From the NCBI GenBank assembly GCA_977030845.1, contig OZ365110.1:20088001-20152000 (forward strand): a stretch of 64,000 bases of DNA, given 5' to 3'. Made by a program: the position numbers and the translations under genes. The first letter of the stretch is position 1, and each line of letters begins with the position of its first letter. Positions 753-48,800 of the stretch are shown here, piece after piece. This stretch comes from Fimbriosthenelais zetlandica (lineage: Eukaryota). The notes under the pieces are model-generated. The model saw only the letters and a program-made list of their open reading frames with translations. It ran no database searches and was not told where the DNA came from.

Positions 753-3700
753 ATGTGGGAGTTGAGAGCTGATCTCGGTTTCACTGATCTCATTGTCAGA
801 TGCCCTGAATGGATGGCTCCCACAACACACCTGCTAATAACTAGGCTTGATTAATCGGATCTAGCTGGGGTCGAATCTATACTTCCATATTTTAGAGTTC
901 CACTAAGCAAAGGTCAGCCTTTTAGGATTGATTGAATCTTTGGAATTTTTCCTTTGTAATCTCACAAATCCAGTGTCTAAATCCGTGTGACAACACAGGA
1001 TTTAGTCGACTTTACCTTATTGTACAAGGATGGATGAACTGTTGATAAACCTTTGCATGTCAGTAGGAAAATGGCTTCACAAAATATGATATTACTTGTT
1101 TTTCATAGATAATGGATACAATCACGCATACCATTTTCATAATAAAAAGGTCTATTTTGACCCCATTTATTGACCAATTTCGAATGATTATAAGGAATCG
1201 TTTCTTGATTTCAACATATATTAATGGACCTTCTGCACATGGCTGTCTGTTACCTCATTTCCCATGTCTGCAACATTATCAGTAATGAACCCGATCGCTC
1301 CTGATTTTATCCAATTTTCTCCATGATCCCTTTATATGGCCAGGTAACTCCAGCGAGAAAGCGGGAAATTCCTTTTTATTTGTCCATACATATTTCATTT
1401 TACAGTCTTGGTGCCGCCCCTGTGTTGTGGTCCATGCATATAAACCAACGCTTGTTTCGGCGAGAATATATACCCTGGATGAATTTCCTGCACTGAACGA
1501 TGTAAAATACGGCCTCTGGGTACCATGAAACTGACCTTTCACTGTATAGCACACCCCTAAAGCCCAGGGCTTAAAACCTGGAAATGACCTTCCCTGGGAT
1601 TAAGCCAATGTCACCACTCGAGTATATCACGCCAATAACGAAATATCCTCTATGCTGACTCAATAATGTATGACCTCTCTTTGCAGGTCAATATGCCTTG
1701 ATTGCAGGACTTTGATCTATAAGCATAATTATTGCCCCCATGTGTATGCAAAAGTTTTGCCCTTTTACAGTAAATTCCCATGCTCTCCATTCAGAGCCAT
1801 TAACTGCAGCATGGGTGTTATATATACCTTCCTGCTCCGACCATTTAAAGGAGAAACCCCCTTTGGAGTTAGGCAAGCAATCAACTTGCCTGCCCACCAA
1901 GGGAGTATGCCATGTCGCAACATCTGTACTTTGATTGGGAAAATAAACCAAGAAGATTAGGAATTTTGATATACAATCCCCTGAAAGTTGCTTCCTGTTA
2001 CATCGATCTTGTAGAACACATACATTCTGCGTCCTCTCTACTCAGCCCCTCATTCTACTCAGGTTAGCCGTCTTAACTTCATTCTGGGGGAATGGGTCCC
2101 ATCACACACAGAAATTGGAGAAGCAGGGTTCGCAAGCCATCGTTAATGGTCAACAAGATGCTATGCTATTGGTTATAGTCGATGGTCTATGGGAGATCAT
2201 TGTCCTACAAAGTACTACACCGTTAACCATTAAGATGCAGTGCTTGGGAAACACATGTTTTAACACATGGTATTGTCATTGCATAAGTCATTGCACAAAG
2301 GCAGGTTTGCATAACATGGTTTAAGGTAACAAATCTACAATTTCTCTCTTCTTACTTAATATTATTTATATAGAAAACAATTGCTTCAATCGTTAATTCC
2401 ACGTATGTAATGAAAGAATCATTTGACAGTGCCAAAGCCAGTTTAGTGGTCTTTTAGTACCATTCAAAATGTCGGTATTTGGTCTTCCATAGTAAATGAG
2501 CTGGAACACTGGTTCTGATATTTACCTATGACACAATCTTATTATGGAAGGAATTTACAGAAGAAACGTTTGCTAAACTAATCTCCAGGCAGTGAAGGGG
2601 CAAGAGGAAGAACCACTAAACACTTGAGAAAAAAACTATCCGCAGCCTGCTTTTGTCTGAAAGATTATCTTATTCAAGACCTCCTTCGAAAATTCAATCT
2701 TCAGGCTTTCTGTTGGCGCATTCCTTTTCAAATTCTCGTTTTTGGTGAGATAATGAAAATCTTCCAACTGATGGATAATAATTGCACAAAACATTCACCA
2801 CTGCTCTGGCTTCAGATCGCTTGATGTTGGCAGGAAAATGTAAGAGCCAAACAGAAGCCTGGTCCCATCTGCAGTGAATTTAAAAACATATATCTGCTCT
2901 TTCCAGAGAAAAGGACAGATTCTGGATTATATAATGTAATTTTTAATTGGAAATCGACAACGAGTTAGATTTTGGAATTCTTTCTGCACAGATACATGGC
3001 TGTACGTTGGCACGGAATGGGATGTGCAGGCAGACCATTGTTGTTGCACCAACGAAAATAGATCAGCATTCAGAAGATCTGGTCGCATCATTCAGAATCG
3101 TTTAACTGTAATAAATCTTCGTTTTGTTCGACAAAATTAAATAAAAGTGTTATCTTCAACCATAATTTGAGATGTGGGAATGCCGTCAAACTGACATTAT
3201 TGGCAGCAACACAGGACCTAGCATAATAAAGAGATTCAGAGAAGGGGAATGTGATGGAAGGAAGAAAACTTATGAAATTAAATTCCACTGATTCCTTTCG
3301 GGTGAACTGATTCCAATCCATATTTCTCACGCCTGTTTTTGGAGGGTTTTGCCTCAAACTGGGTTTTGCGCTTGGCCATGTCTGCCACAATTCCTTTGAG
3401 TCTGTGATTTCATAACTTGGTTTCTTTACATGAGAATTCTTTGTAATAGACATGTTCACAAGGGATTGTCATGACATCATGGAATGATAACAGACGAAAA
3501 TTAGGTGTCTTGTGAAAATGAGCTGATTGTTATCCCGGGAAGTATGAATAAATTCAGAACCGAATCATTTACATGTAATAATTAATCAAATAGTATTTAA
3601 GAAAACAAAATCAATCTTTTCATAACATCATTAAATTTTCAAGATTGATTATACACAGGAGGTAGATGCGTGTAAATGATGGAGTGATTCGTTAAATAGT

Positions 3701-21345: not shown

Positions 21346-24300
21346 TGTATGATGTCGACACAAGAGGACGCTTTGCCCAATCATCATCTAATGCCCTACC
21401 ATATGCTATGTGCATGGTGGGCATTCCACGCATGATGCCCAAAGTGAAACTCTTCCGACATGTTAGCAGACAATTGGGGATGAGAAGTACTTCAAACCGG
21501 CCGATTGTAGTCGCAAGCGAAACAAAACCGACGGGTTAGGTCGTCGTGTGACCTATACTAGAATAATAACCGAATGATACAGGAAAGATGTATTATCATC
21601 TCTTTCTCCGATCATATGCACTTCTAATCTGAGGGGAACATTGCACTGGTTGTTATAACAAAGCAAATGATGTTCAAAGCGCCTCGCGTGATTTTATGTA
21701 TATTACATAATGTATACATGGTGTAAATGCCTATTTATTTAAGGCAAAGTGCAAGGGCTCACATACTCAGTGGATTTTTGGATATAGTATACTTGTATGT
21801 ATACATACACATGAAACACATTGAGATTGGTTAAACAATCTTAAGTTCCTGTTCTGACTAATCATGTCAGAGGCTTTGTTTTACAGATCTAGTTGTATAG
21901 GCAATTTTGTCCCCTTATTTTTTTATATTGCACAACAGAGGCATCATTGAAACTGTTGTCCAACAATATCAATTTGAGTTTCTTAGGTTTCACACCAAGT
22001 ACACTGGTACATGGCTGCGATGAATAAGTTTATATTTGGATTCCAATATTATTGTACATACTTATATTCATTATAATTATTTTGCCAATTTTTTACATTT
22101 ATTAAAATCTGAGATAAAATATTTCAGATCGATTGTAAATCGACTTGTTCTTGACTTGGGATTCAATGTGTATAACCCTATTCTTCAAAGAGTCCCCGAT
22201 ATGTACAATTCATAAATGTCAGAATATTTGTCAAAACCTGAATTAGCAGGAACAAACGACATGATCAGAAAGTTCAAGTTCACTTCTCGTGGTGTAAAGA
22301 AATAAGCTTACGTAAATTGACACATATCGACTGCATTGTATTATAGAATAGCACGAAGATTCTCATACAAATTTTACAAATGGAAAAATGACAAATATCT
22401 GGACCCATTAATATACTTATTCTGAAACAAAGTCAAGGTTATAGGTAAAAGACTCGAATTGTTGATTCAGTGGATCAGTTAATTCCATTTGAACTGAGAA
22501 TAATGATTATGTACATGTATACATGCAATTTTCTTCTTTACCTTTTGTCTTCTCTTTCAACGTAGAATCCTAAGAAATCAGTCCGTCTTTAATCATAATT
22601 ATTCCCCTTGTAAACATTCTCCTGGTTTTTATGTGATGAATAAAAAAGAAGTGTAGGCAGGGTATTTAAAGGGATAGACTATTGTAACAAGCCTTAACCC
22701 TACTGAGGTAGTGACAGTGAATTCATGTCATCAACGATATCTCATTGTAGAATTAGTGCATTCGGGAAATAACTCTTATAATTACCCTTATGCAGATTTC
22801 CAAGATTCATCAAGATATACAAATTCGCAGGGTTGTTTTTGTGGGGTTGTGGATTTTGGTGGGACAATGAAATATCAAAAGTGAAAATTATGTTCCGAAA
22901 CTGGATAAAAAGTTCCCTACTTGATGTGGGCTTATTTTGTGTTAAATGACACTCCCTTTATTTACACTCCCTTCGTCATCAACTCAGATTCTATTGAATA
23001 TGCCTATTTTATTATCATCGGATATATTCTCATAGCTCTTAACTAGTCTGTATAAAGACAAACGTTAGATTTAGAGTTCAGAAACTCCTATATATAAATC
23101 GAGCTTAGTTACAGTACTGTTAAAAAGCTGCTTTGAGGAATTTTTTTCATGAGTGTTTTGGAGATACCTGGAGTATGCGAATGATAGTAGAATTTCCACA
23201 TTATTATTGACTGCATCATTCCAACGTTTAAACTCATATGGGAAGAATATCCCAAAAAACATCATTTGGAAAGAATATTTCTAGAGAGGGAATGTCGGAC
23301 TATTACTAACCGCTTACATGACAATGATGATAGTGATAGGCCTATTGGTTGCTAACAAACATCAAGAACAATCATGTTGAAGTTTCTCCTGAAAGACACC
23401 TAGTCTTCATTTTGGTTCATTTTCTTCCTTGTAATACTAAAATAATTCTATATTAGGCCCCTACTTTATTCTAGATAAAGTCATTCACTGCATGCATAGG
23501 CTAAGATGCTATTTTCATGGGTTTTTGGTTTGGAGTTATACAGATAAGTGACTATGAATAAAAACTAAGAGATGCTATGAAATGAAATAGTGATTTCATA
23601 AATATGGCGTATTGTTTCAACTCGATGCAACACAAGCCAATTTGTATGTTTTTCTACTCAGTTATAAAACTGTCCCATTTCATTTCTAAAAAGGAAATTG
23701 TCACCCATTATAGTTCTATAATGACTAACTGGATTTGTTTCAACAAGTGGATGTACGAAAGAATAGAATGAATGTGTAAAGAAAATGTTAGAACATCACC
23801 AAATTCACGCATTTTCACTACGTTTTCCGTAGATTGTGCTATGTGGTGGCTAACTATGGTTTGTACATTATATAAATACACTTATATCTGTCACAGTGGA
23901 CTTTGTTACTATTACGTCTCCCAAGCTGCCCACCGTCAGATTCTGTTATCCTAGTTCCGGTATACACATGTATGTAAGGAAGGAAATCAATGTTATGGTA
24001 GAAGAGGAAATGCATTGTGCATGGGAGGCATGTTGTCGTTATGTGATTTTATCCCAATGGAATTATATGTATAAAATCTGAATTATTATGGGTGTTAAGA
24101 CCTGCCTTGATATACATGAATAAATATATTACATTATACTAATGTGCGTCTTCTTATATTCAGTCGTTCCGGTTCAATACCATAACAAATGTCAGACGAA
24201 ATTTCAACAAGACTTTTTTATTTGTCATATAGGCCTATATCAGGCTCCAACCAAATGGTTAACAACACTTCTTGTGTGGCTACATAACTATGTTCATTCC

Positions 24301-33994: not shown

Positions 33995-34008
33995 AGGTCA
34001 AAGGGTCA
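33995..34008 (+). promoter_or_regulatory. DR2 nuclear-receptor element (RARE-like) in the CYP26 proximal promoter
   Basis: AGGTCA aa GGGTCA about 270 bp upstream of the inferred ATG; TATA-like TATAACTAAA at 34031; octamer ATGCAAAT at 34105-34112. Confidence 0.6.
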
Positions 34009-34276: not shown

Positions 34277-37200
34277 ATGAAGAGAAACTGGACGACAGAA
34301 AGTCTTATAGACTGGGATGCTGCGGCCGTGAGTGGGTAAGTTAAACGTCCCTGTGAGGACATGGACTTGTGAATGGGTTGTACTGCGTGGACTCTCTTGC
34401 GTGGATTGGTCTTGCTTCTGACGTGACTTTTTCTACCCACTTAAAAAAGTTACCAAACTGCAAAAAGTAGCCTATACTTTTCCCAGCTCCAGAGCATAGA
34501 CATCTCTGCATTTGTATAACAATAATAGCTTGTACCCGTTTTAAAAGTTACCAAACTGCAAAAAGTAGCCTATACTTTCCCCAGCCATAGACATCTCTGC
34601 ATATGTATAACAATAATAGCCAGTTTCTTGTTTTAAATTCATTTAAACAATCCGTTTAATAATTATTGTCCCAGGTCCAAGGAAGCTTACGTGAATAACA
34701 TAAGTTTCTAATCCGAAGAATCGGGCCCCTTTTGCGCACATTTGTTTCAACCATTGTAGCAACCGTGATAAATTTTGATTGCATAATTATGTTTTCTACA
34801 ATATGTCGAATATAATGTACCTAATTTTATTTTTCTCCTTCCACATTTCTCCCTTTCCCATAGCCTACATTGCATTGGTTCTATCCTCCAATCCAATAAT
34901 GTGAACTCATACTTCGATTTCTTCTAATTAGCCTACGTGTACTTTATTTATAAATGGAATGTGACACGGAAAAAAGGCTGTATTGTGAATTATATAATTT
35001 AATGCATCCCTACTAATTCCTCTGTCGTAGTGGAGGGCTTTTGAAAAATAGCCAATGGATCTGAAGGAAATCCACATTGCCCAGTTGGTAACCTTTTGCC
35101 AGGGGTCATCTTTTGTGAGTGACCAGCGGCGTGGACTTGGCGGGATAGAGGGGAACAATTGTGGGTTTGCCGGACAACAATCAGCAGTCGGACCAACGAA
35201 GAAGGGGTAACTTGTATAAGGGGTTTGGGTTCTGCGGTATTAGATTTGGTCAGTGTGTGTGTGGGAGGTGAGGGGAGGTGGACTAGTGGGTGAGATGGCT
35301 GGGTGCTTGGGAGGGAGGGTTGGTATAGAGAGGACCAGCCCACACCTGTGGAAGGTCTCTGTTTCACCCGACAAGGTCTCTGTGTGGACACGCTTGGACT
35401 TGACTTGTGAGAGGGACAGTGTGGCCATCTTAATTAGTACCATGAGCCTTGAGCAATATTGCTTCTATAGTAAAAAGATGTATTCACTACTATACGCTCA
35501 AATACTATGGGGTTGCATGTGTAAAAATATATTTATTTCAAAGAATTGGCCGTGGTATTTTAAATAATATAGGCCTACCTTTTATTACAAGGCATTCATG
35601 TATCGATCCTTTCTAGACATTACGTATACACAGCAAGATGGGTCTCCTTAATTGTCTCATATTCAGAACATTTACTTTTGAATTCGCCTTGGAAATTTCA
35701 AGTTACTAGTAGGCCTATCTTCACAAGATAAATATCATTTTGTATAATGGACCATGAAAATAAAGAGGCAATTAAGACATGTTTTCAAACGCCTCAAGGG
35801 GTCGTGATCCCGTTAGACGTGTCACACTGAGGACATACTCTAGAGATGATCCACTACAACCCCCATTCTCACAATTAAAGCGAGCTCTAGCTTATTGGCG
35901 ATGTACAAGATGGCCTATTGGAAACGGCTATACCCTTAAATGGCCTTAAGACATAAACATGGGGAAGGGCTATTTAAGGCCACGGGCCGAGACGAACCTG
36001 GGAAATAACATTATTGTACAGGCAATAAAAGATTACCCAGCTATAGGGCTTCAACGTAACTTTGAATATATTTTCAATTAATTTCAATTAACTAATAAGG
36101 ACGCTCATGCATTCATGTAGTTGAAATGTTTAGAGTATTTAAAAAAAGTCATTAATTTGTTAAATTAATTATTTGTTAAATTAATTATTAGCATTTTCCA
36201 TTTCAGGACATATTTGTCTTCACTCTCGGACTCCTTAACTCCATACATATTCGTAACATGGATCTTTCGACTAATACTCCTGATTATCTCCCAGAGATTG
36301 TGGTTCAAGATGAACAGATTCGCTGGTGATGTTAATTGTAAATATCCCCTACCCCCGGGCACCATGGGGCTCCCATTCATAGGCGAAACCCTCAGCTTAA
36401 TTATCTGGGTAAGGCTCCTCAGTTTCTAACCTCATAAATTTCATTCTTATTAAACTGCCGGTACATAGATAGGCCTATAAAAAATCTGATGTATTTTATA
36501 TAAACTTTCCATTTCTTATAGAGATCCGAATTCTTCACCTCCAAAAGAAAAAGACTTGGGAACATTTTCAAAACCCATCTTTTGGGAAGGCCTACCGTTC
36601 GAGTCATAGGTTCACAAAATGTGAGGAAGATTCTAATGGGAGAACATAATCTAGTCTCCACCCAATGGCCTACCAGTACTCAGATGATCTTTGGGGATGG
36701 AGCCTTGGCTTTGACCTCAGGAGTCGTTCATAAGGAGAGGAGGAAGTCCATTATGCAGGCTTTTAACCAGGGGGCGCTAGAGAGCTATGTTCCTCACATT
36801 CAGAGGGCTGTTAGGGTAGGTGCTAACTCCTGTACGAGTTACTGTACTTATGGTTTTATATTTCCACTATTAAACGTAGAATGGGAGACTTATATTGCCT
36901 GGGACAGACTGCAAACGTCTCCAGTTCCGCGTGTTTTTCTTGTCATGCCACTTCAGAAAAAACCTCCAGCAATCGAGCACGCTCTTATTAGATTTTCTAA
37001 TCAAGTGGCAGAGGGTATGCGTTTATTTGATTTGTATATACGTACGGTGATCAAAGAGGCATGTGCGTCTCGAAAGTCACCTGTACCATGAGCGCAATCA
37101 CAAATATGCTCTGATCTGTTCAAGCCATTAGAATAATCTGTCAGACTGAATGCAAAAAATAGCCCCACGACTTTCTTGTATACCTGAATATACGACTAAT

Positions 37201-38886
37201 TCGTAAAATACATTATAGATATTTGAATATATTAATTATCTTTAAAAAATGTGTTAACTTGCACAATTTTCATCGTTGTCATAAAGCCAATGAATATTAG
37301 GCCTACACTCTCTTTTTTTACTCAAGGTAATTTTTCTTATATTTTAGGACTGTCTATCTCGATGGTGCAAATCAGAAGAGGTCTTGGCGTATCCTGAGTG
37401 TAAGCTTCTCACATTTAAGTTAGCCGCAACGGTACTAGTCGGCTTTGATATTCCTCATGAGGATTGTCTTGACCTGCTAGCTGCTTTCGAAGAAATGTCC
37501 AGTAATGTGTTTTCCCTACCCGTCCGAATTCCAGGATCGGGACTTTATAAGGTAAAAGATATATAGCCTACTACTATGTGTTTATATAATGAAAACAGGA
37601 ATAATTTTTATCCCAACATTATGATCCAAAGACAAATGCTTTACTACAGAATCTAGTGAAATTTCATTTTACAAAAATACGGTTTACGAAAGTAAGTAAG
37701 ATAGGCCGATATACAAGATGTTGGATGAGTGTACTCAGTTTTACATGGCAGAAGTTACATCTTACAATCTTTCTCGTAAGGTGTAACATTATTTCTCTGA
37801 TATTTGATATAGGTGTAGACATACATGTACCTAATCAGTAGATTTTTTATGTCTGTAGGCTATGAGGGCTCGTGAAAAAATCATCTCTAAACTAGGCCAA
37901 TACCTGGATATGGCCCTGAGGGATAACAAAGCCCTGGGTTTGGAAAAACCATTTATAAGTGCTCTAGAGTTACTTGCCCAGGCTGACACAAAAAGTGGAT
38001 TCCCGTCAGGTAAATGTGAAGTGCTCGAGGCAGCTTTGGAGCTCCTCTTCGCTGGACATGAAACCAGTTCATCAGCCGCCTGCTCGACCATGCTGCACCT
38101 GGCTAATAAGGTAAGATGTTGTACCAAATAGACCTTGATATAAGACAGAAAGGAGGACAAAAATGAAAGAATTGAGATTACTAAGTCTTTCTTCCTATAG
38201 CTCGAATCGAAATCTCTTATTAATCTTCATCAATGTTACTTTGCAGCCATCCATTATTGAAAAGGTTTGCAATGAGTTGTTTGAGCATGGCCTTCTCAGA
38301 GAAAATGACGGGTGTGATCTGACTTTTGATTCTCTCAACAAACTGACTTATACCAACCTAGTAGTCCGGGAAGTGCTCCGACTTTGTCCACCAGTAGGTG
38401 GAAGCTTCAGAAAGGCTTTAAGAACATTTGAGATAGGGGTGAGCTACAATTTTGAATTTAATCATTATCTTTATTATTTAACCCACATTCATTTAACCCA
38501 CAATTCTCAACGAAATCCACCTTTTTCAGGGGTATCAAATACCTAAAGGCTGGACAGTTGTCTACAGTGTACGGGACACCCATCAAACATCCACAGCATT
38601 TGATGACGTCGAAGAGTTCAATCCTGACCGCTGGCTCGGACCGCCCAATGAGATGGCCAAGAATGACTTCCTGCCTTTTGGAAGTGGAAGTCGCTCTTGT
38701 GTAGGAAAAGAGTTCGCTAAACTTCTTCTAAAGATAATTACTGTGGAGCTGGTAAGAAATTGTTCCTGGAAGTTAGTGAAGGGGAGGACAAGCATAGATA
38801 TGTTACCGGTACCACACCCAAAGGACAATATGCCAATCAGAATTACTGAGGTCTCTGCAAATCGCAGGCGAGCCTATACAGTGTGA
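34277..38886 (+). CDS. CYP26: Cytochrome P450 family 26 (retinoic-acid hydroxylase), about 519 aa; exons 34277-34335, 36207-36408, 36522-36815, 37348-37551, 37859-38110, 38247-38438, 38530-38886
   Basis: N-terminal membrane anchor, PLPPGTMGLPFIGETL, KTHLLGRPTVRVIGSQNVRKILMGEH (CYP26-typical), I-helix ELLFAGHETSSSA, EVLR, FNPDRW and heme motif FGSGSRSCVG. All introns are GT-AG. Exon 1 is inferred from the phase-2 match AGT GG|GTAAGT to cag|G ACA. AATAAA at 38928. Confidence 0.95.
34445..34620. repeat. Two-copy tandem duplication, ~98-bp period, in CYP26 intron 1
   Basis: aaaagttaccaaactgcaaaaagtagcctatacttt...catagacatctctgcat.tgtataacaataatagc starts at 34445 and 34543. Confidence 0.9.
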
Positions 38887-39992
38887 TAAAGCATTTATAT
38901 TGAAGGTTAATATATGGAAAGATTCTAAATAAAAGTATATCAGTTCAATAATGGTTGGCTCCATCACAACTAATATCACTATTGTAAAAGTAAATACAAT
39001 ATCAATTGACCTAGCAACAACCACAATCATTGTTGCCTAAAACTCAAATGCGAGCTAATTATACATTTTTACTTTAATCTATCTCAGGGATAATTTATAG
39101 TGGCCTTATAATTATTAAGCGATAGGATGCAGAAATTGTGTATGTGTACATTTGCTGTAGCTGTATTTAAGCTTATGTAGTATTTGACTGAATGATAAGC
39201 ATAGATCTAGAAAATTGTAACAGTTATTAAACCAACATATATATTTATGTTGGTTCTATGAGTGAACAGGGTATTTATATTGCTATACAATTTTGAATTG
39301 TTTCATTATATTATTATTTTATGTATCACTATGGTTAAAAAAAACCTCGAGATAAAGTACATGTAAATAAAAAATAAGTTTCCAGAGAAAACAAGTCTTA
39401 ATAATGGGTTTTCTTTTTTTTGACATAAATGTAGAAGCCTTGTCATCTTTGTTAGATGCCTAGATGAATGGTTGTCCGACTTCCTGATTACTGGCTTCTT
39501 TAGATATCTTTAGATGGAAGCCGCGTGTCCCGACGAGGGGAGCCCTTGTCACAGCCCTTTCACTGTCTGACAATGAGACTTCAATAATGGCAATAATATC
39601 CAGGACAATGCAAAATTATACGATCATACCAAAACTGCTGAAGCAATTTGGTCTTACTACGCAGGATAGGATAGTGGCAACCTTTGAGTATAGGCCCTGC
39701 TCCTTTGCCACATTTAGGCTATAATAGCTCGAATATCTATTTCACAGGGAGACGCAGGCCTCTGTATTATGAATGGAACCGTAAAAATGAATAACATATT
39801 ATATACTAACTTTCCAATATATTATGTAAATGAGAAACGGTTTAAATACAGGAATTCATCACAGTATAGGCCCTATTGCTGACTCCTAAGATTTCAGTGC
39901 ATGTTTTCTACACCGAGAACTCACAATCCTGTACCTTGTTTTCAAGCAAGCCAAGTACAGGAATTCATAAACTCACTCCTGTCATGGGTGAC

Positions 39993-40579
39993 TGACTTAC
40001 CCCTGAACTTTTCCCCTGACCTACCTGTATTAATAGGTTTGACCTTTGACCTAAAGATGTGTATAAATGATCATTGGCGGACGCCTTCTAAATGGAGAAG
40101 CTGTCGGTTTATACCTCTACCTAATATATCCGTTCGATGGGTCATTAAAAGGTCATAAACCTGGAAATAAGAAAGACTGGGAGAAGGGGCATTACTGACC
40201 CGACCTATTTTAATCTTCATAGATTTCTTAACAAAAGAAGAACCCATCAGGACGCATTGATACTTTCCCACACACTTAATAAATTAAAGGCGAAGAGATT
40301 TTGTTCAAGGATGTAGAAGTCCAAAAGGATTCTTATTTTACAAATCATTTCTTCATGGATTATAACCTACATCATTGTGGAGGGATGATTTATTCATCAA
40401 CGTAAAGTCTGCATTGAACCTCCTATACCGAGACCTAACAATTATTTTTTTTAAATCAAGATGAAATGGACATGGGGTATTAGTGGAATATTTTCTCCCA
40501 GATTGCATGTTTAGTTCAAGTAAGAAACACCAGGGGAGAATGAATATGCCCTACTCAGTTAGAGGTCAGTCGCAGGTCA
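39993..40579. promoter_or_regulatory. Cluster of nuclear-receptor direct repeats (RARE-like)
   Basis: DR5 GGGTCA ttaaa AGGTCA 40139-40155; DR5 AGGTCA gtcgc AGGTCA 40563-40579; DR1 TGACCT t TGACCT 40040-40052; DR5-like TGACTT acccc TGAACT 39993-40009, overlapping a DR7 at 40004-40022. Confidence 0.7.
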
Positions 40580-40643
40580 TTTTTATTATTGGTCATCTCC
40601 GGGTCGCTGACCAGTGAAGCTGAAAGCTGTAGCTGTTGTCGTC

Positions 40644-42304
40644 ATGACATGGAAGTCAACCTTGATTTACTTGGGTAAGATATATCTACTATTATATAGA
40701 TTCTAGGGGTTCTTGTGACTTGTTTATCAAATGGGCTTCTGCCATGAAACTATGAGTCGTTATAAAATAGACAAGCATGCTGTATATATGGTATAGTTCA
40801 CTTATATGTAGTGCATAACGATTACTGAGTATAGCAAGCAGGTAGGTCGATTGCTATTATTAGAACAGCAACACTTGAATATTTTGGGTTATTTAGTATA
40901 AACAACAGACGATGTCTGGATTAGCCTACATTTCGGCCTCATTTATGTTCTCATTTAATTCCCTGTCTCTTCCCGCTCGTGTATTGCACGTTTACGCTTT
41001 TTTGATAATTGTTCCTGACAAATGTTCGGAAAATTTTAAATATAGTACAAGAATTAATGTTGGTTAAAAAGATAAAATACAATTCTACACGTCAAAGCGT
41101 AATTAAGTGTAATTATCATAATATTAGAATCATTAGAATTATACTGTCCCTTGGGCTATTTTGTTCATGCTTTAATCTGAAATCAAACCTGATGATTAAT
41201 TAACATTTTCTGCTATCTTGTTAATCAGTTCTTGCCATGGTCATACTACTCATCCAAGACTGGAGTATCCAGGTCGTTCGTCTTGTCATCTACTTACTGC
41301 TGGCTGTCAATCTTCTCATTGGCCTCACCATTGCTGTATCGTGGGTCTCTACCTCTGCTAGTCTTGTTCTCACTGAAGCCATCTCCAGCGCCATTTGTAG
41401 TCCTCTCACAGTGATGATGGACATCAAAATAGAAGTCCTTCACCTGAGACCACACCAGGAACGCAATTCAGACTTTCCTAACCACAGACAGCCCCCGCCA
41501 TGGCTAAAACAAGCCGTGCTTCTCACTCTCTTAAGCAGTAATAATCTGACTGATGGAAAAGCAGCCATTTCGTACCTCCTTTGTTGGACATTCTGCAAAA
41601 CATTGAAGCTTGTTTGCCCATCTTCTGAATTCAGACCAGGCTATTTAAGATTGTTTAGATCAATAGAATTGAGAAGGAAACCACCTGAATGTTCAAATTA
41701 TGAAATTCTTGGTGTATTAGTGCTGGTAGCTGGGGTACTATGCATTGGTTCGTGGGCCATACCTCTGGAAAGAGTCATCATATCACTGATCTATTGCTTA
41801 CTAACTAATAGGTTCTTTATGGATAAGGTGAGGCATTGCGAATATAATAGTTATCTCTGTGACGATATAAATGGCTTAGAGCCACTATTTGTGAATGGTA
41901 TTTACATGAGTTTTGAGCTTTTCTTGTCGAGCATTATAACTATTTTCAGTTACTTTTACTTGAATACAACAATTTTAATATTTCCAGCTTTGATTCTGAA
42001 TATAGGTTTGCCATTAAACCATTTCTTAAAAGAAGTGGTGGAACCGTTTAAAAAAGAAAGGAATAAGAGGAATATATATCGTAAAGCAGATAGACGAGAG
42101 TTGTCCCTGTATAATGATGTCTGTGCTATATGTCTTTCCCCCATGCGCCAGGGTCGAGTAACTCCCTGTAAGCATATTTTCCATGGGCATTGTCTCAGGA
42201 GGAGTTTGAGGGGCAAGGGGGCTTGTCCTATGTGTAATCAGAAGCTGAAATGTGATGAAACGCCCAAATTTCCTCTTTTCACACAGAATTTCGATTTCAG
42301 TTAA
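40644..42304 (+). CDS. Multi-pass membrane RING-H2 E3 ligase, RNF145/RNF139(TRC8)-like, about 368 aa; exons 40644-40674, 41229-42304
   Basis: Exon 1 MTWKSTLIYL G|GTAAGA (phase 1) joins cag|TT CTT GCC ATG. Several hydrophobic segments are followed by the C3H2C3 RING CAICLSPMRQGRVTPCKHIFHGHCLRRSLRGKGACPMC. Confidence 0.85.
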
Positions 42305-45833: not shown

Positions 45834-48800
45834 TTACGTAGTCATCATCTTGGCGAATTCTGAAAAAAGCAAAGTTCATTCGTGAGATTAAAAAACCAAA
45901 CCATTTATATGATTCACTGTAGGAATTAGTATAATATTATAACGCAAGTCCAACACGAAACCAAGCACCTAGTATAGTAATGAATCATAGAAAATGATTA
46001 TCAATCATAACGATAATAAATTAATTGTTGTTGACAGAAGCGCTTCCTCCAAATCTTTGCTATGGTCTAGAGTTCCTGGTGTCTGGTGCCATGACATTTT
46101 CCAAGTAATCATAACAATAATAAATGAATAAATGTTAACAGAAACATTTCCACCGAATCTTAAATTTGCTATTATATAGGCCTAGCGTTCCTGGGTCTCG
46201 TCAATGGCCATGACATATTCCAAACTGAAATATATATATTATGCTTGCTATTCAGCATTTCAGGTTACTTTAACAGTAGGCCTACTATTACCATTTCATG
46301 TCTGTTTTTAAACCAACAATCTTTGGCCAGTTAATCATAAATTAACACGTCATCTGAAAATATTATTTTAAATAGTCGGAGGTAGGATGTGTGGGCAGTA
46401 GCCTTCCTCCCGGCTGAATTAAGAGTGCCTCAGAGAACTGAAGGCTGTGATCTTCAAATTAATCCCACACGATCGGAACTTCCTCACTACTACGTCATCT
46501 ATTCGTTCTATAAATTCCTCTCCTCCACTATGGCCAAGGCTTGATTTAAATACCATTTGCTCCGCCACAAAAAGATAAATAGTTGATTGTAGGCCTACAG
46601 GCTGCTGAGGGACTAAGGGGCATCCCTGTGTCTAGTGATAAAAACCATCAACAGAACCACCGACAATTATTAGCAAAATGTGTGGTATTTGGAGGTTTTA
46701 TTCTGTGCCAGAATAGCTTGAGATAATCTATTTCAGTGCTATTCCTGATTACACCTTGAGAAAAAATGTTCTCTTGGTGCTAAAATCATCAGTGCTATCG
46801 ATGGAGGCATGGTACATTCTTTCATTATTTTCTAGATGTATGCATTTAATAAGCCTATAGATAAGAATAGATATTAATGGTACCATGGTATTCATATTAG
46901 ATATTTCCTGTACATGTACAATAAAGAGATCCAATTGCCGGAACTATTTTCCTATACCTGTCAATATTTCTCATTCTGGAGCTATTTACAATGCAATCGC
47001 GCCATTATTCGCCGAATCTTCGGAATGTTTTGATTTATTTAGCATACTTGTAAAGGTGTACTCGAAAGGTGGCCTAAAGGAACACTCGAACTGTAAGGTA
47101 TATGTATTAAAACCTACCTTCATAGTTAACCTGGCCATCACCATCTATGTCTGCTTGCTTCATCATTTCGTCCACCTCCTCATCTGTGAGTTTCTCGCCT
47201 AGATTCGTCATCACATGGCGGAGCTCGGATGCTGAGATAAAGCCATTGCCATCTTTGTCAAAGACCCGGAAGGCCTGGCGAATCTCTAGCTCTAGATCAG
47301 TTTCCACGAACTTTTTTGCCATTAGGTGTAAGAACTCAGTGAAGTCAATGGTTTCGCTACCTGCAAAGGATAAACAGGATATTAGGCCTAGGTATGGACG
47401 TTTTTTTGTTTTTTACTTCTGTACAGTACCATGATATAAGCAATGTTCAGGTATAGATAGGCCTTGTCAATGGACATCCTTATCCTCATTCCACAGATCA
47501 GTACCATGTACCATGGGAAATTCTGATCTATTATATCTATAGAGGTTTTTCTTGAGACGTCCCAGGCGGAAACCAGGCTTTACACAGTTAGAAATAATAG
47601 TAGTAGTCGGCTCACTAGAAGTTGCCATTTTACATGTCATAGACGTAACTTATAAAGGTGTCTACACATAAAGCCGATTCTCCGATAGCTGTCCGATTCA
47701 ATATTTCTATTAATTAACACCCAATGCTTGTAATTTGAACAGACTGTTACACATAGATCTAAGGGTAATTACTGACACAATTTCAATCATTAGAATGTCA
47801 AGTGTTACAGTAGTGGAATGAGACAAAGTGAAATATTTACCGTCAATATCAACTTCATTGATAATTTGGAGAAGTTCAGCCTCGGTTGGATTCTCTCCGA
47901 GTGTCCTCATAACTTCTCCCAACTCACGGGTCGTGATTACTCCATCTCCGTTCTTGTCAAACAATGCGAAGGCCTCTCCTAATTCTGCAAGATTCATAAC
48001 GTTTAGAAGTTTAGGCATGTCGTTAGGTAGATCATGCGGACGGATAGATCGCACTAGTTCAGAAAATCTTGAACTCTGGATGGTCATTCTCGACCTTTTC
48101 TTCTTTTTGCTGAGAGAAATGAGCTTCTGGAATATCTCAGAAGCTGTAGTTCTCTTCCTGCGGTAAATGATCATGGTGATAATTATTATGTCCTTTTTGG
48201 AATCAACGAGCACAGATAGGCCTAAGTGCCTTTCCTTCAAATGGGAGTACTATTTATCCGTTGCTATCAAGACTCGATGTGGATTAACTTTGTGGTTGTT
48301 AACAGCTGGGATTGTAGGCCTACCCACAGATCCACCCTGATCGGCTGCTGAAAGGCGATTCCAAGCAGTCAGCCTCACCTCAATATTTATACATGGGGCA
48401 TGGGGTTGGTATGCGGGGGAGGGAAAGCATCACATGAGGAAGCTGGCCTGGGAGGGAATAGTTTACACTCACTGAGTGTTCCTAGAAGTCAAACCATCCT
48501 GTTTGGTGCTCATTCCTCAACCACATGTTGGCCTGCTAGACCTGCCCATGGCATACATTGAATATTTCAACTAATTGACTCAACTTCTTCCTAGTATATC
48601 AGGATGTTTCTAGTCATGAATATCAGACGTTGCTTTCCTATCAATTTACTCAAAATTTACTGTACTAAATGAAATTCAGATAATCTGAATGCCAATTAAG
48701 AGATTGTATAATAATAACTCATGGGGATTGAAACAAGTCGGAGGCCATTGAAGCTGGCTTGGCGAGCTAAGCGCTAAGCGCTCTAGCCTGAAAGGCGACC

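What the first reader, a model, noticed from the sequence alone, without database searches (positions are those of the whole stretch)
39993..40579. Dense RARE cluster between CYP26 and an ER-type E3 ligase: a candidate non-chordate retinoid feedback module
Seen: two perfect DR5s, a perfect DR1 and an overlapping DR5-like/DR7 within about 590 bp. The last DR5 is only 65 bp upstream of the RING gene ATG. Rough estimate: RGKTCA-n5-RGKTCA should occur about 0.1 times per 64 kb by chance. Known: DR5 is the classical RAR/RXR element controlling CYP26 in vertebrates and amphioxus; RNF145/RNF139-type ligases degrade ER membrane enzymes; RA-dependent transcription outside chordates is poorly established. 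Inferred: a 3' enhancer for CYP26, possibly co-inducing a ligase that could turn over the P450 or other ER lipid enzymes.
Basis: partly seen in the sequence, partly recalled or inferred. Interest (0 to 1): 0.85.

Follow-up and report, generated by a model that had tools for sequence, protein, structure and literature searches.

The report
Retinoid-type receptor sites beside CYP26
A 590-base stretch between a retinoic-acid-degrading enzyme gene (CYP26) and a membrane ubiquitin-ligase gene holds far more hormone-receptor binding motifs than chance allows, in the spacings retinoic-acid receptors use. It is a good but untested candidate for a retinoid switch in a non-chordate animal.

Summary
Window 39993-40579 contains two perfect DR5s, one perfect DR1, a DR7 and a DR5-like element. 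That is 11 RGKTCA half-sites in 600 bp (0 of 1000 whole-window and 0 of 5000 local shuffles reach 11), while the window as a whole has half-sites at chance level. The stretch is not repetitive within the window.

The upstream gene is an intact CYP26: six coding exons, stop at 38886, 43-46% identical to CYP26s across Bilateria. The downstream gene encodes a 368-aa multi-pass membrane RING-H2 ligase. It is closest to HRD1/gp78 and lacks the TRC8_N domain of RNF139/RNF145.

The cluster lies 1.1-1.7 kb past the CYP26 stop and after three poly(A) signals. It ends 64 bp before the ligase's modelled ATG, so it is best read as the ligase gene's promoter-proximal region.

Within CYP26 ±10 kb the window has four canonical DR1/2/5 elements, the same number as the amphioxus and gecko CYP26 loci. 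Seven other invertebrate loci have 0-2.

No receptor binding, retinoid response, transcript ends or conservation could be tested. CYP26-ligase linkage is absent from nine other CYP26 loci. Verdict: a real, non-random candidate nuclear-receptor (RARE-type) module; the ligase-degrades-P450 idea remains speculation.

The parts
39993..40022 (-). Three co-oriented half-sites: AGGTCA (40017-40022), 7-nt spacer, AGTTCA (40004-40009), 5-nt spacer, AAGTCA (39993-39998). This gives a DR7 plus a DR5-like element with one mismatch.
40040..40052 (-). Perfect DR1, AGGTCA-a-AGGTCA. This is the consensus DR1 shared by RXR dimers, RAR/RXR, HNF4 and COUP-TF.
40062..40068 (+). TATAAAT, 10 bp after the DR1. A possible TATA box for an upstream alternative start; inferred only.
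40139..40155 (+). Perfect DR5, GGGTCA-ttaaa-AGGTCA. The 3' half-site also reads AAAGGTCA, an NR4A/NBRE-like extension.
40196..40206 (-). GGGTCA half-site overlapping a one-mismatch AGGTCG.
40415..40420 (-). Single half-site, GGTTCA.
40513..40518 (+). Single half-site, AGTTCA.
40563..40579 (+). Perfect DR5, AGGTCA-gtcgc-AGGTCA. It ends 64 bp before the modelled ATG of the RING gene and is followed by a T/A-rich run.
40590..40613 (.). TGGTCA ... TGACCA: two one-mismatch half-sites in inverted orientation between the last DR5 and the ATG.
36207..38886 (+). CYP26 gene, six coding exons: 36207-36408, 36522-36815, 37348-37551, 37859-38110, 38247-38438 and 38530-38886 (stop). All junctions are GT-AG. 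The ATG and a few codons lie in an upstream exon that was not found.
   Evidence: names
38928..39371 (+). Poly(A) signals after the CYP26 stop: AATAAA at 38928, ATTAAA at 39226, AATAAA at 39366. The CYP26 3' end probably lies before about 39400; inferred.
40644..40674 (+). Modelled exon 1 of the RING ligase gene: ATG plus 10 codons, GTAAG donor.
   Evidence: inferred, no RNA data
41229..42304 (+). Exon 2 of the RING ligase gene, giving 368 aa in total. Multi-pass membrane protein with a C-terminal RING-H2.
33995..34008 (+). Perfect DR2, AGGTCA-aa-GGGTCA, 2.2 kb upstream of the first identified CYP26 coding exon. It is the fourth canonical element at the locus.

Best explanation
The 1.76-kb spacer between the tandem, same-strand CYP26 and RING-ligase genes contains a composite nuclear-receptor response region: a DR7/DR5-like array, a DR1, a DR5, scattered half-sites and a second DR5.

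Most likely RXR-containing dimers bind it, with RAR/RXR the leading candidate because the spacings are exactly its DR1 and DR5 classes. It would then act as the promoter-proximal control region of the ligase gene. Lying only 1.1-1.7 kb past the CYP26 stop, it could also serve as a downstream enhancer for CYP26, working together with the DR2 upstream of that gene. The outcome would be ligand-dependent co-regulation of a retinoic-acid-degrading P450 and an HRD1/gp78-like ER ubiquitin ligase.

Shown: the motifs, their statistical excess, the absence of repeat structure, and the gene identities and positions.

Inferred: the transcription start, which receptor binds, any response to retinoids, and which gene is the target.
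For: - The motif cluster is far beyond chance on whole-window and local shuffles. The canonical spacings add an independent factor of 0.0023.
- No other copy of 39000-40700 exists in the window, and there is no internal repeat beyond the half-sites.
- All four perfect DR1/2/5 elements of the 64-kb window lie in the 34.0-40.6 kb CYP26-RING locus.
- Uniform control scan of CYP26 ±10 kb: window 4 elements (0 of 300 shuffles), amphioxus 4 (0 of 300), gecko CYP26A1 4 (0 of 300). The two annelid (Owenia) loci have 1 and 2, a hemichordate 1, an unidentified CYP26 locus from an ENA assembly 1, and a scallop, an abalone and a brachiopod 0.
- Both DR5 spacers fit the EMSA-validated amphioxus DR5 consensus NNN(A/G)(A/C/G) reported in PMC5247814.
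- Annelid RAR/RXR binds DR1, DR2 and DR5 in vitro (PMC5821490). A mollusc CYP26A is induced 2 h after RA (preprint 10.64898/2025.12.01.691671).
- Position: poly(A) signals for CYP26 at 38928-39366; the last DR5 ends 64 bp before the in-frame, GT-AG-spliced exon 1 of the ligase gene.
Against: - There are no transcript data (no sequencing run was listed), so the ligase start site and the CYP26 3' end are models.
- Exon 1 of the ligase is inferred. The DNA just upstream of exon 2 looks like a decayed version of the N-terminus seen in the homologues, now with two stops. The gene's 5' end has therefore been remodelled, and the '64 bp' figure depends on my model.
- No close relative's genome was reachable, so conservation is untested.
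- Half-site repeats are shared by many receptors. The DR1 is also the consensus HNF4/COUP-TF site, and the first DR5 carries an NR4A-type extension.
- CYP26-ligase adjacency is absent from nine other CYP26 loci.
- Mollusc RARs do not bind RA, and whether this species' RAR does is unknown.
- The presence of RAR and RXR in this genome was not checked.
Confidence: 0.45

Rival explanations
1. The sites are functional but are used by other nuclear receptors with no retinoid input. Candidates are HNF4, COUP-TF or TR2/4 on the DR1, NR4A-RXR on the first DR5, or lineage-specific receptors. They would drive tissue-specific (for example gut) expression of the ligase gene and/or CYP26.
For: - The DR1 is the generic AGGTCA-a-AGGTCA consensus.
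- The first DR5 has an AAAGGTCA 3' half-site, as NR4A monomers and NR4A-RXR dimers prefer (my own knowledge).
- A DR7 and isolated half-sites do not fit RAR/RXR.
- Platynereis cyp26 genes are expressed in the midgut (PMC5821490), a typical HNF4 territory.
- Mollusc RARs do not bind RA (cited in PMC5821490).
Against: Two perfect DR5s plus a DR1, with a DR2 upstream of CYP26, are exactly the RAR/RXR repertoire. The count matches chordate CYP26 loci, where the elements are validated RAREs (PMC5247814). This rival overlaps with the best explanation, since several receptors could share the region.
Confidence: 0.3
2. A non-functional cluster: a statistical outlier picked out by a very large scan, or the product of neutral micro-duplication of half-site-bearing oligomers.
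For: - A Poisson model expects about 51 equally dense half-site clusters in 250,000 windows.
- The first two half-sites of the - strand array share the flank 'GGGG', which suggests a small local duplication.
- First readers flagged many receptor-site clusters in this genome, so selection bias is real.
- No conservation or expression evidence exists.
Against: Canonical spacings reduce the scan-wide expectation to about 0.12. Lying beside one of the few genes classically controlled by DR5s is a further independent coincidence. About 290 kb of real sequence (the window plus nine loci) shows no other non-satellite cluster above 6 half-sites per 600 bp.
Confidence: 0.15
3. The cluster derives from a dispersed repeat or transposable element that carries half-sites, as Alu DR2 elements do in primates.
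For: An unchecked first-reader note reports a 355-bp tandem unit carrying a four-half-site cassette elsewhere in this genome. A scallop CYP26 locus holds a satellite with 25 half-sites per 600 bp.
Against: No second copy in the 64-kb window at word size 7. No terminal or internal repeats and no tandem structure beyond the DR1 itself. A genome-wide copy number could not be obtained.
Confidence: 0.07

Closest known systems
Vertebrate CYP26A1 RAREs (R1/R2 DR5 elements) and the amphioxus CYP26-cluster RAREs (PMC5247814)
   Same: Perfect RGKTCA DR5 elements, plus a DR2, clustered within a few kb of a CYP26 gene. The count per CYP26 ±10 kb is the same as in amphioxus and gecko in my scan. The spacers fit the amphioxus EMSA consensus.
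   Different: In the gecko CYP26A1 control locus three of the four elements, and in the amphioxus locus three of four, lie upstream of the gene. Here three of four lie downstream, against the next gene's start. The half-sites are AGGTCA/GGGTCA rather than the conserved AGTTCA-n5-AGTTCA. Density is higher: 11 half-sites per 600 bp against at most 5 in the chordate loci. The host is probably a protostome. Binding and RA response are untested.
RARbeta2-type promoter (a DR5 immediately upstream of the TATA box)
   Same: A perfect DR5 is followed within a few bases by a T/A-rich run and lies less than 100 bp from the start codon of the downstream gene. A DR1 lies 10 bp before a TATAAAT. The comparison rests on my own knowledge of the RARbeta2 promoter.
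   Different: The downstream gene is a membrane RING ligase, not a receptor. The start site is unmapped and the T/A run after the second DR5 is not a consensus TATA box.
HRD1 (SYVN1) / gp78 (AMFR) polytopic ER RING-H2 ligases, which carry out ER-associated degradation of P450s (review PMC6976991)
   Same: Multi-pass membrane N-terminal part with a C-terminal RING-H2. The best solved-structure matches are human HRD1 (the alignment runs from the last membrane helices through the RING) and the AMFR RING.
   Different: Only 368 aa. It has no CUE, VIM or proline-rich tail and no Pfam family beyond the RING. Only two clear homologues turned up among 5.8 billion proteins. Substrates and localisation are unknown.
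   Same: Polytopic RING-H2 ligases. They appear among the feature-based look-alikes in the ESM Atlas.
   Different: The defining TRC8_N domain is not detected. The protein is about half their length, and the sequence matches favour HRD1/AMFR.

Membership tests
Retinoic acid response element (RARE; RAR/RXR site of DR1/DR2/DR5 type) | Two (A/G)G(G/T)TCA half-sites in direct orientation, spaced by 1, 2 or 5 nt | tested here: met
   DR1 at 40040-40052, DR5 at 40139-40155, DR5 at 40563-40579 and DR2 at 33995-34008
Retinoic acid response element (RARE; RAR/RXR site of DR1/DR2/DR5 type) | Occurrence beyond chance expectation | tested here: met
   Four DR1/2/5 elements against 0.47 expected per window (2 of 1000 shuffles reach 4). 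0 of 300 shuffles for CYP26 ±10 kb.
Retinoic acid response element (RARE; RAR/RXR site of DR1/DR2/DR5 type) | Bound by the species' RAR/RXR heterodimer | not testable with these tools
   Needs EMSA or ChIP. Annelid and mollusc RAR/RXR bind consensus DR1/2/5 in vitro (PMC5821490; 10.1101/2025.03.09.642214).
Retinoic acid response element (RARE; RAR/RXR site of DR1/DR2/DR5 type) | Confers retinoid-dependent transcription on a linked gene | not testable with these tools
   No sequencing run was listed for this sequence.
Retinoic acid response element (RARE; RAR/RXR site of DR1/DR2/DR5 type) | Conserved in related species | tested here: inconclusive
   No close relative was reachable. The nearest ligase homologue is 53% identical and known only as a transcript. 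More distant CYP26 loci have 0-2 elements, in non-homologous positions.
Retinoic acid response element (RARE; RAR/RXR site of DR1/DR2/DR5 type) | Host genome encodes RAR and RXR | not tested
   Only this window is readable. Annelids generally have both (PMC5821490).
Cytochrome P450 family 26 (CYP26) | P450 fold with the heme-binding FxxGxRxCxG motif and the I-helix AGxET motif | tested here: met
   Pfam p450 matches on the exons. The assembled 500-aa model contains FGSGSRSCVG and AGHETS.
Cytochrome P450 family 26 (CYP26) | At least 40% identity to named CYP26 members, with CYP26s as the best hits | tested here: met
   45.6% to gecko CYP26A1, 44% to amphioxus and 43% to scallop over about 450-490 aa. 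All named top hits are CYP26A1/B1/C1 or CYP26-like.
Cytochrome P450 family 26 (CYP26) | Retinoic acid hydroxylase activity | not testable with these tools
   Needs an enzyme assay.
HRD1/gp78-class polytopic ER RING-H2 ligases | Multi-pass membrane domain followed by a cytosolic RING-H2 (C3H2C3) | tested here: met
   At least six hydrophobic 19-mers. zf-RING_2 at E 9e-10. The Cys/His pattern is conserved in the 3-sequence alignment.
HRD1/gp78-class polytopic ER RING-H2 ligases | Sequence similarity to HRD1/AMFR that exceeds similarity to other RING families and extends beyond the RING | tested here: met
   Profile against PDB: HRD1 8kes_A at E 8e-14 over profile positions 226-351, then AMFR RING entries at 3e-13 to 4e-12. 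The single-sequence search agrees.
HRD1/gp78-class polytopic ER RING-H2 ligases | Fold of the membrane domain; ER localisation | tested here: inconclusive
   The AlphaFold2 model from three sequences has pLDDT 38.7 and is unusable. Localisation is not testable.
RNF139 (TRC8) / RNF145 | TRC8_N (PF13705) membrane domain | tested here: not met
   No hit at E <= 0.01 in Pfam. The protein is 368 aa against about 560-660 aa for these families.

The most novel reading that the evidence does not exclude
In a protostome (probably an annelid), RAR/RXR directly induces CYP26 through a downstream DR1/DR5 cluster. The cluster also switches on a lineage-restricted HRD1/gp78-like ER ligase, which then limits the life of the P450 or of other ER retinoid or lipid enzymes. 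That would be a transcription-plus-degradation feedback unit, and it would mean direct RA control of CYP26 is not a deuterostome invention.
Probability: 0.1. Interest if true: 0.8.

Novelty: new member of a known kind. Interest (0 to 1): 0.5.

Why it matters
Carvalho et al. (PMC5247814) found the conserved DR5 near CYP26 in vertebrates, amphioxus and a hemichordate, but not in an annelid or a mollusc. They concluded that direct RA control of CYP26 arose in deuterostomes. A recent preprint reports RA-induced CYP26A in a snail, but no cis-element is known in any protostome.

This locus offers four short, precisely located elements that can be tested directly by EMSA, reporter mutagenesis and RA treatment. 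A positive result would push the RA-CYP26 feedback loop back to the bilaterian ancestor, or show convergent recruitment. It would also identify an unstudied ER ligase as a receptor target. A negative result would be a useful warning about reading receptor motifs from sequence alone.

Tried and rejected
- **Transcript evidence.** Two searches for sequencing runs (the 4-kb locus, RNA only; the ligase exon, any kind) listed none.
- **Conservation.** The ligase has only two real homologues. One is a 53%-identical transcript contig with no promoter DNA. The other is a 36%-identical gene on an ENA contig whose DNA could not be served; its upstream neighbour there has no P450 hit.
- **Synteny.** I looked for the ligase next to CYP26 in scallop, Owenia (two loci), Lingula, Haliotis, amphioxus, gecko, a hemichordate and an unidentified ENA contig. 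It was not there.
- **Ligase structure.** The AlphaFold2 model had pLDDT 38.7, so no fold search was run.
- **Profile re-search for ligase relatives** found nothing new.
- **Organism.** The CYP26 tree is a star. It excludes only the vertebrate and ambulacrarian clades. Run accessions were not found in papers.
- **An ORF at 39901 starting MFST**, like the homologue's N-terminus, was rejected as chance (tblastn E 2.2).
- **Rfam** gave only a tRNA-like hit at 26.7 kb.
- **The upstream CYP26 exon carrying the ATG** could not be located.

Full report
**Observation.**
- On the - strand there is a co-oriented array: AGGTCA (40017-40022), 7 nt, AGTTCA (40004-40009), 5 nt, AAGTCA (39993-39998). That is a DR7 plus a DR5-like element with one mismatch.
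- A perfect DR1, AGGTCA-a-AGGTCA, lies at 40040-40052 (- strand).
- On the + strand there are two perfect DR5s: GGGTCA-ttaaa-AGGTCA at 40139-40155 and AGGTCA-gtcgc-AGGTCA at 40563-40579.
- Single half-sites lie at 40196, 40415 and 40513. One-mismatch sites lie at 40201, 40363, 40431, 40547, 40590 and 40608.

**Statistics.** RGKTCA half-sites over the whole window are at chance (142 against 139 ± 12), so composition does not explain the cluster.
- The densest 600 bp holds 11 sites and the densest 200 bp holds 7. The maxima in 1000 dinucleotide-preserving shuffles of the window are 9 and 6.
- Shuffling only 39900-40700 gives a mean of 2.08 and a maximum of 8, so 0 of 5000 reach 11.
- DR5 expectation is 0.12 per window and two were observed. 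For DR1/2/5 together, four were observed against 0.47 expected, and 2 of 1000 shuffles reach four.
- The scan is very large, so I estimated the look-elsewhere effect. A Poisson model expects 2e-4 such clusters per window, 0.14 in this genome's 692 annotated windows and about 51 in 250,000 windows.
- Given 11 randomly placed half-sites in 576 bp, three or more canonical DR1/2/5 pairs arise with probability 0.0023. The joint scan-wide expectation is therefore about 0.12, before the neighbouring gene is considered.
- Chance is unlikely but cannot be dismissed on statistics alone.

**Not a repeat, as far as can be seen.** BLASTN of 39000-40700 against the window at word size 7 finds only itself. 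No direct or inverted repeat families span the cluster. Tandem Repeats Finder reports only the DR1 itself. Genome-wide copy number could not be checked. A first-reader note about a half-site-bearing 355-bp satellite elsewhere in this genome keeps this rival alive at low probability.

**The gene on the left is CYP26.** tblastn with full-length homologues and a splice-site search give six GT-AG-bounded coding exons: 36207-36408, 36522-36815, 37348-37551, 37859-38110, 38247-38438 and 38530-38886.
- The 500-aa model has an intact I-helix (AGHETS) and an intact heme loop (FGSGSRSCVG).
- An exhaustive HMMER search with the last exon returned 9475 hits. The named top hits are CYP26A1/B1/C1 or CYP26-like proteins from reptiles, amphioxus, molluscs, annelids, brachiopods, echinoderms, a hemichordate and a priapulid.
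- Full-length identity is 43-46% to gecko CYP26A1, amphioxus and scallop.
- The exon starting at 36207 begins in mid-codon after a CAG acceptor, with no in-frame ATG. The start codon therefore lies in an upstream exon that I could not place.
- AATAAA or ATTAAA signals follow the stop at 38928, 39226 and 39366.

**The gene on the right is a membrane RING ligase.** The 355-aa ORF at 41237-42304 carries a C-terminal RING-H2 (zf-RING_2, E 9e-10) and no other Pfam family. In particular it has no TRC8_N.
- Only two clear homologues exist among 5.8 billion proteins: P0001 (53% identity, transcript contigs) and P0002 (36%). A bivalve protein matches the RING only.
- In PDB, the profile's best matches are human HRD1/synoviolin (8kes_A, E 8e-14, from the last membrane helices through the RING) and the AMFR/gp78 RING.
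- Atlas look-alikes are HRD1-, AMFR- and RNF145-like clusters.
- 'ER-type E3' is therefore reasonable, but 'RNF145/RNF139-type' fails its defining-domain test.

**The ligase gene's 5' end is a model.** Exon 1 (40644-40674: ATG plus 10 codons, GTAAG donor) joins exon 2 at a CAG acceptor (exon 2 starts at 41229), in frame, giving 368 aa.
- The DNA just upstream of exon 2 still resembles the homologues' N-terminal hydrophobic segment but now carries two stops.
- Exon 1 supplies a replacement hydrophobic segment and so keeps the number of membrane passes before the conserved core.
- I take that as support for the spliced model, but it remains an inference. No RNA data could be obtained.

**Position of the cluster.** The intergenic spacer is 1757 bp (38887-40643). 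The cluster starts 1.1 kb after the CYP26 stop, beyond three poly(A) signals, and ends 64 bp before the modelled ligase ATG.
- The DR1 sits 10 bp before a TATAAAT (40062).
- The last DR5 is followed directly by a T/A-rich run.
- The simplest reading is that the cluster is the ligase gene's promoter-proximal region. A role as a CYP26 downstream enhancer is possible at this distance but has no specific support.

**Comparison with other CYP26 loci.** I fetched CYP26 ±10 kb from nine loci and scanned them in the same way.

| Locus | Perfect DR1/2/5 | Shuffles reaching that count |
|---|---|---|
| Window | 4 | 0 of 300 |
| Branchiostoma | 4 (all DR5) | 0 of 300 |
| Gecko CYP26A1 | 4 (three upstream DR5 plus a downstream DR2) | 0 of 300 |
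| Owenia (annelid), locus b | 2 | 4 of 300 |
| Owenia (annelid), locus a | 1 | 36 of 300 |
| Glandiceps (hemichordate) | 1 (DR5 about 970 bp upstream) | 49 of 300 |
| Unidentified ENA contig | 1 | 30 of 300 |
| Scallop, abalone, Lingula | 0 each | not applicable |

- The two chordate results reproduce what is known (PMC5247814), so the scan works as a positive control. The window behaves like the chordates.
- No locus other than the window exceeds 6 half-sites per 600 bp, apart from a satellite in the scallop locus.
- None of the nine loci has a homologue of this ligase next to CYP26 (tblastn; gene tables).
- Both DR5 spacers satisfy the amphioxus EMSA-derived consensus NNN(A/G)(A/C/G) quoted in PMC5247814.

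**Organism.** My CYP26 tree is unresolved. It places the window's protein outside the well-supported vertebrate and ambulacrarian clades. Identity to Ciona is low (36%). Several other follow-up agents working on this genome concluded 'probably annelid' from other genes; I did not verify this. 'Non-chordate' is thus likely but not proven here.

**Literature context.**
- Annelid (Platynereis) RAR/RXR binds DR1, DR2 and DR5, and its RAR is a low-affinity RA sensor. Three cyp26 genes are expressed in the midgut together with rar and aldh1a (PMC5821490).
- Mollusc RAR/RXR binds RAREs, but mollusc RAR does not bind RA (10.1101/2025.03.09.642214; PMC5821490).
- In the snail Tritia, CYP26A mRNA rises 2 h after RA treatment (10.64898/2025.12.01.691671).
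- Carvalho et al. found no conserved DR5 near CYP26 in Capitella or Lottia, and inferred a deuterostome origin of direct RA control (PMC5247814).
- ER-anchored P450s are degraded by ERAD using gp78 and CHIP in mammals (PMC6976991). The ligase idea is therefore mechanistically conceivable, but nothing here supports it.

**Conclusion.** The cluster is real and non-random, and it is built from exactly the element classes used by RAR/RXR, next to a gene that RAR/RXR controls directly in chordates.
- Best explanation (confidence about 0.45): a functional RXR-partner response region at the ligase promoter that may also feed CYP26.
- Main rival (0.3): the same sites used by other receptors with no retinoid input.
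- Other rivals: a non-functional outlier (0.15) and repeat origin (0.07).
- The 'feedback module' with P450 turnover remains speculation (about 0.1).
- This is a new candidate member of a known kind of element. It is worth an EMSA and an RA-treatment experiment, but it is not yet a discovery.

Noticed in passing
window 33995-34008: Perfect DR2 (AGGTCA-aa-GGGTCA) 2.2 kb upstream of the first identified CYP26 coding exon. It is the only other canonical DR1/2/5 in the 64-kb window. Whether it lies in the CYP26 promoter depends on an ATG-bearing exon that I could not find.
   Followed up: partly
window 41178-41236: The DNA immediately upstream of ligase exon 2 still aligns with the N-terminal hydrophobic segment of homologues P0001 and P0002 but contains two in-frame stops. 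The 5' end of the gene appears to have been remodelled: a new short exon 1 at 40644 replaces a decayed ancestral N-terminus.
   Followed up: partly
L011 18208-22891 (Owenia fusiformis, CYP26 paralogue b): A gene with a RINGv (MARCH-type membrane RING-CH, PF12906) domain lies about 5 kb downstream of this annelid CYP26, in convergent orientation. It is unrelated in family to the window's RING-H2 ligase and is probably a coincidence.
   Followed up: no
L011 626 and 6957; L005 13048: The two Owenia CYP26 loci carry three canonical DR elements in 49 kb (a DR1 and a DR5 upstream of paralogue b, and a DR5 in an intron of paralogue a) against about 0.28 expected. This is a weak hint that annelid CYP26 genes in general may be associated with DR5s.
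   Followed up: partly
L004 about 22300-23250 (Ylistrum balloti): A stretch with 25 RGKTCA half-sites per 600 bp but no canonical DR1/2/5, presumably a satellite. It is a reminder that repeats can mimic receptor-site clusters.
   Followed up: no
window 1532-1690: Four exact AGGTCA/TGACCT half-sites in 160 bp (three on one strand, then an everted pair with an 8-nt spacer). No canonical spacing.
   Followed up: no
window 47107-48240 (- strand): Exons of a calmodulin-like EF-hand gene (EF-hand_7, E 2e-18) about 5 kb downstream of the ligase gene.
   Followed up: no
   Followed up: no
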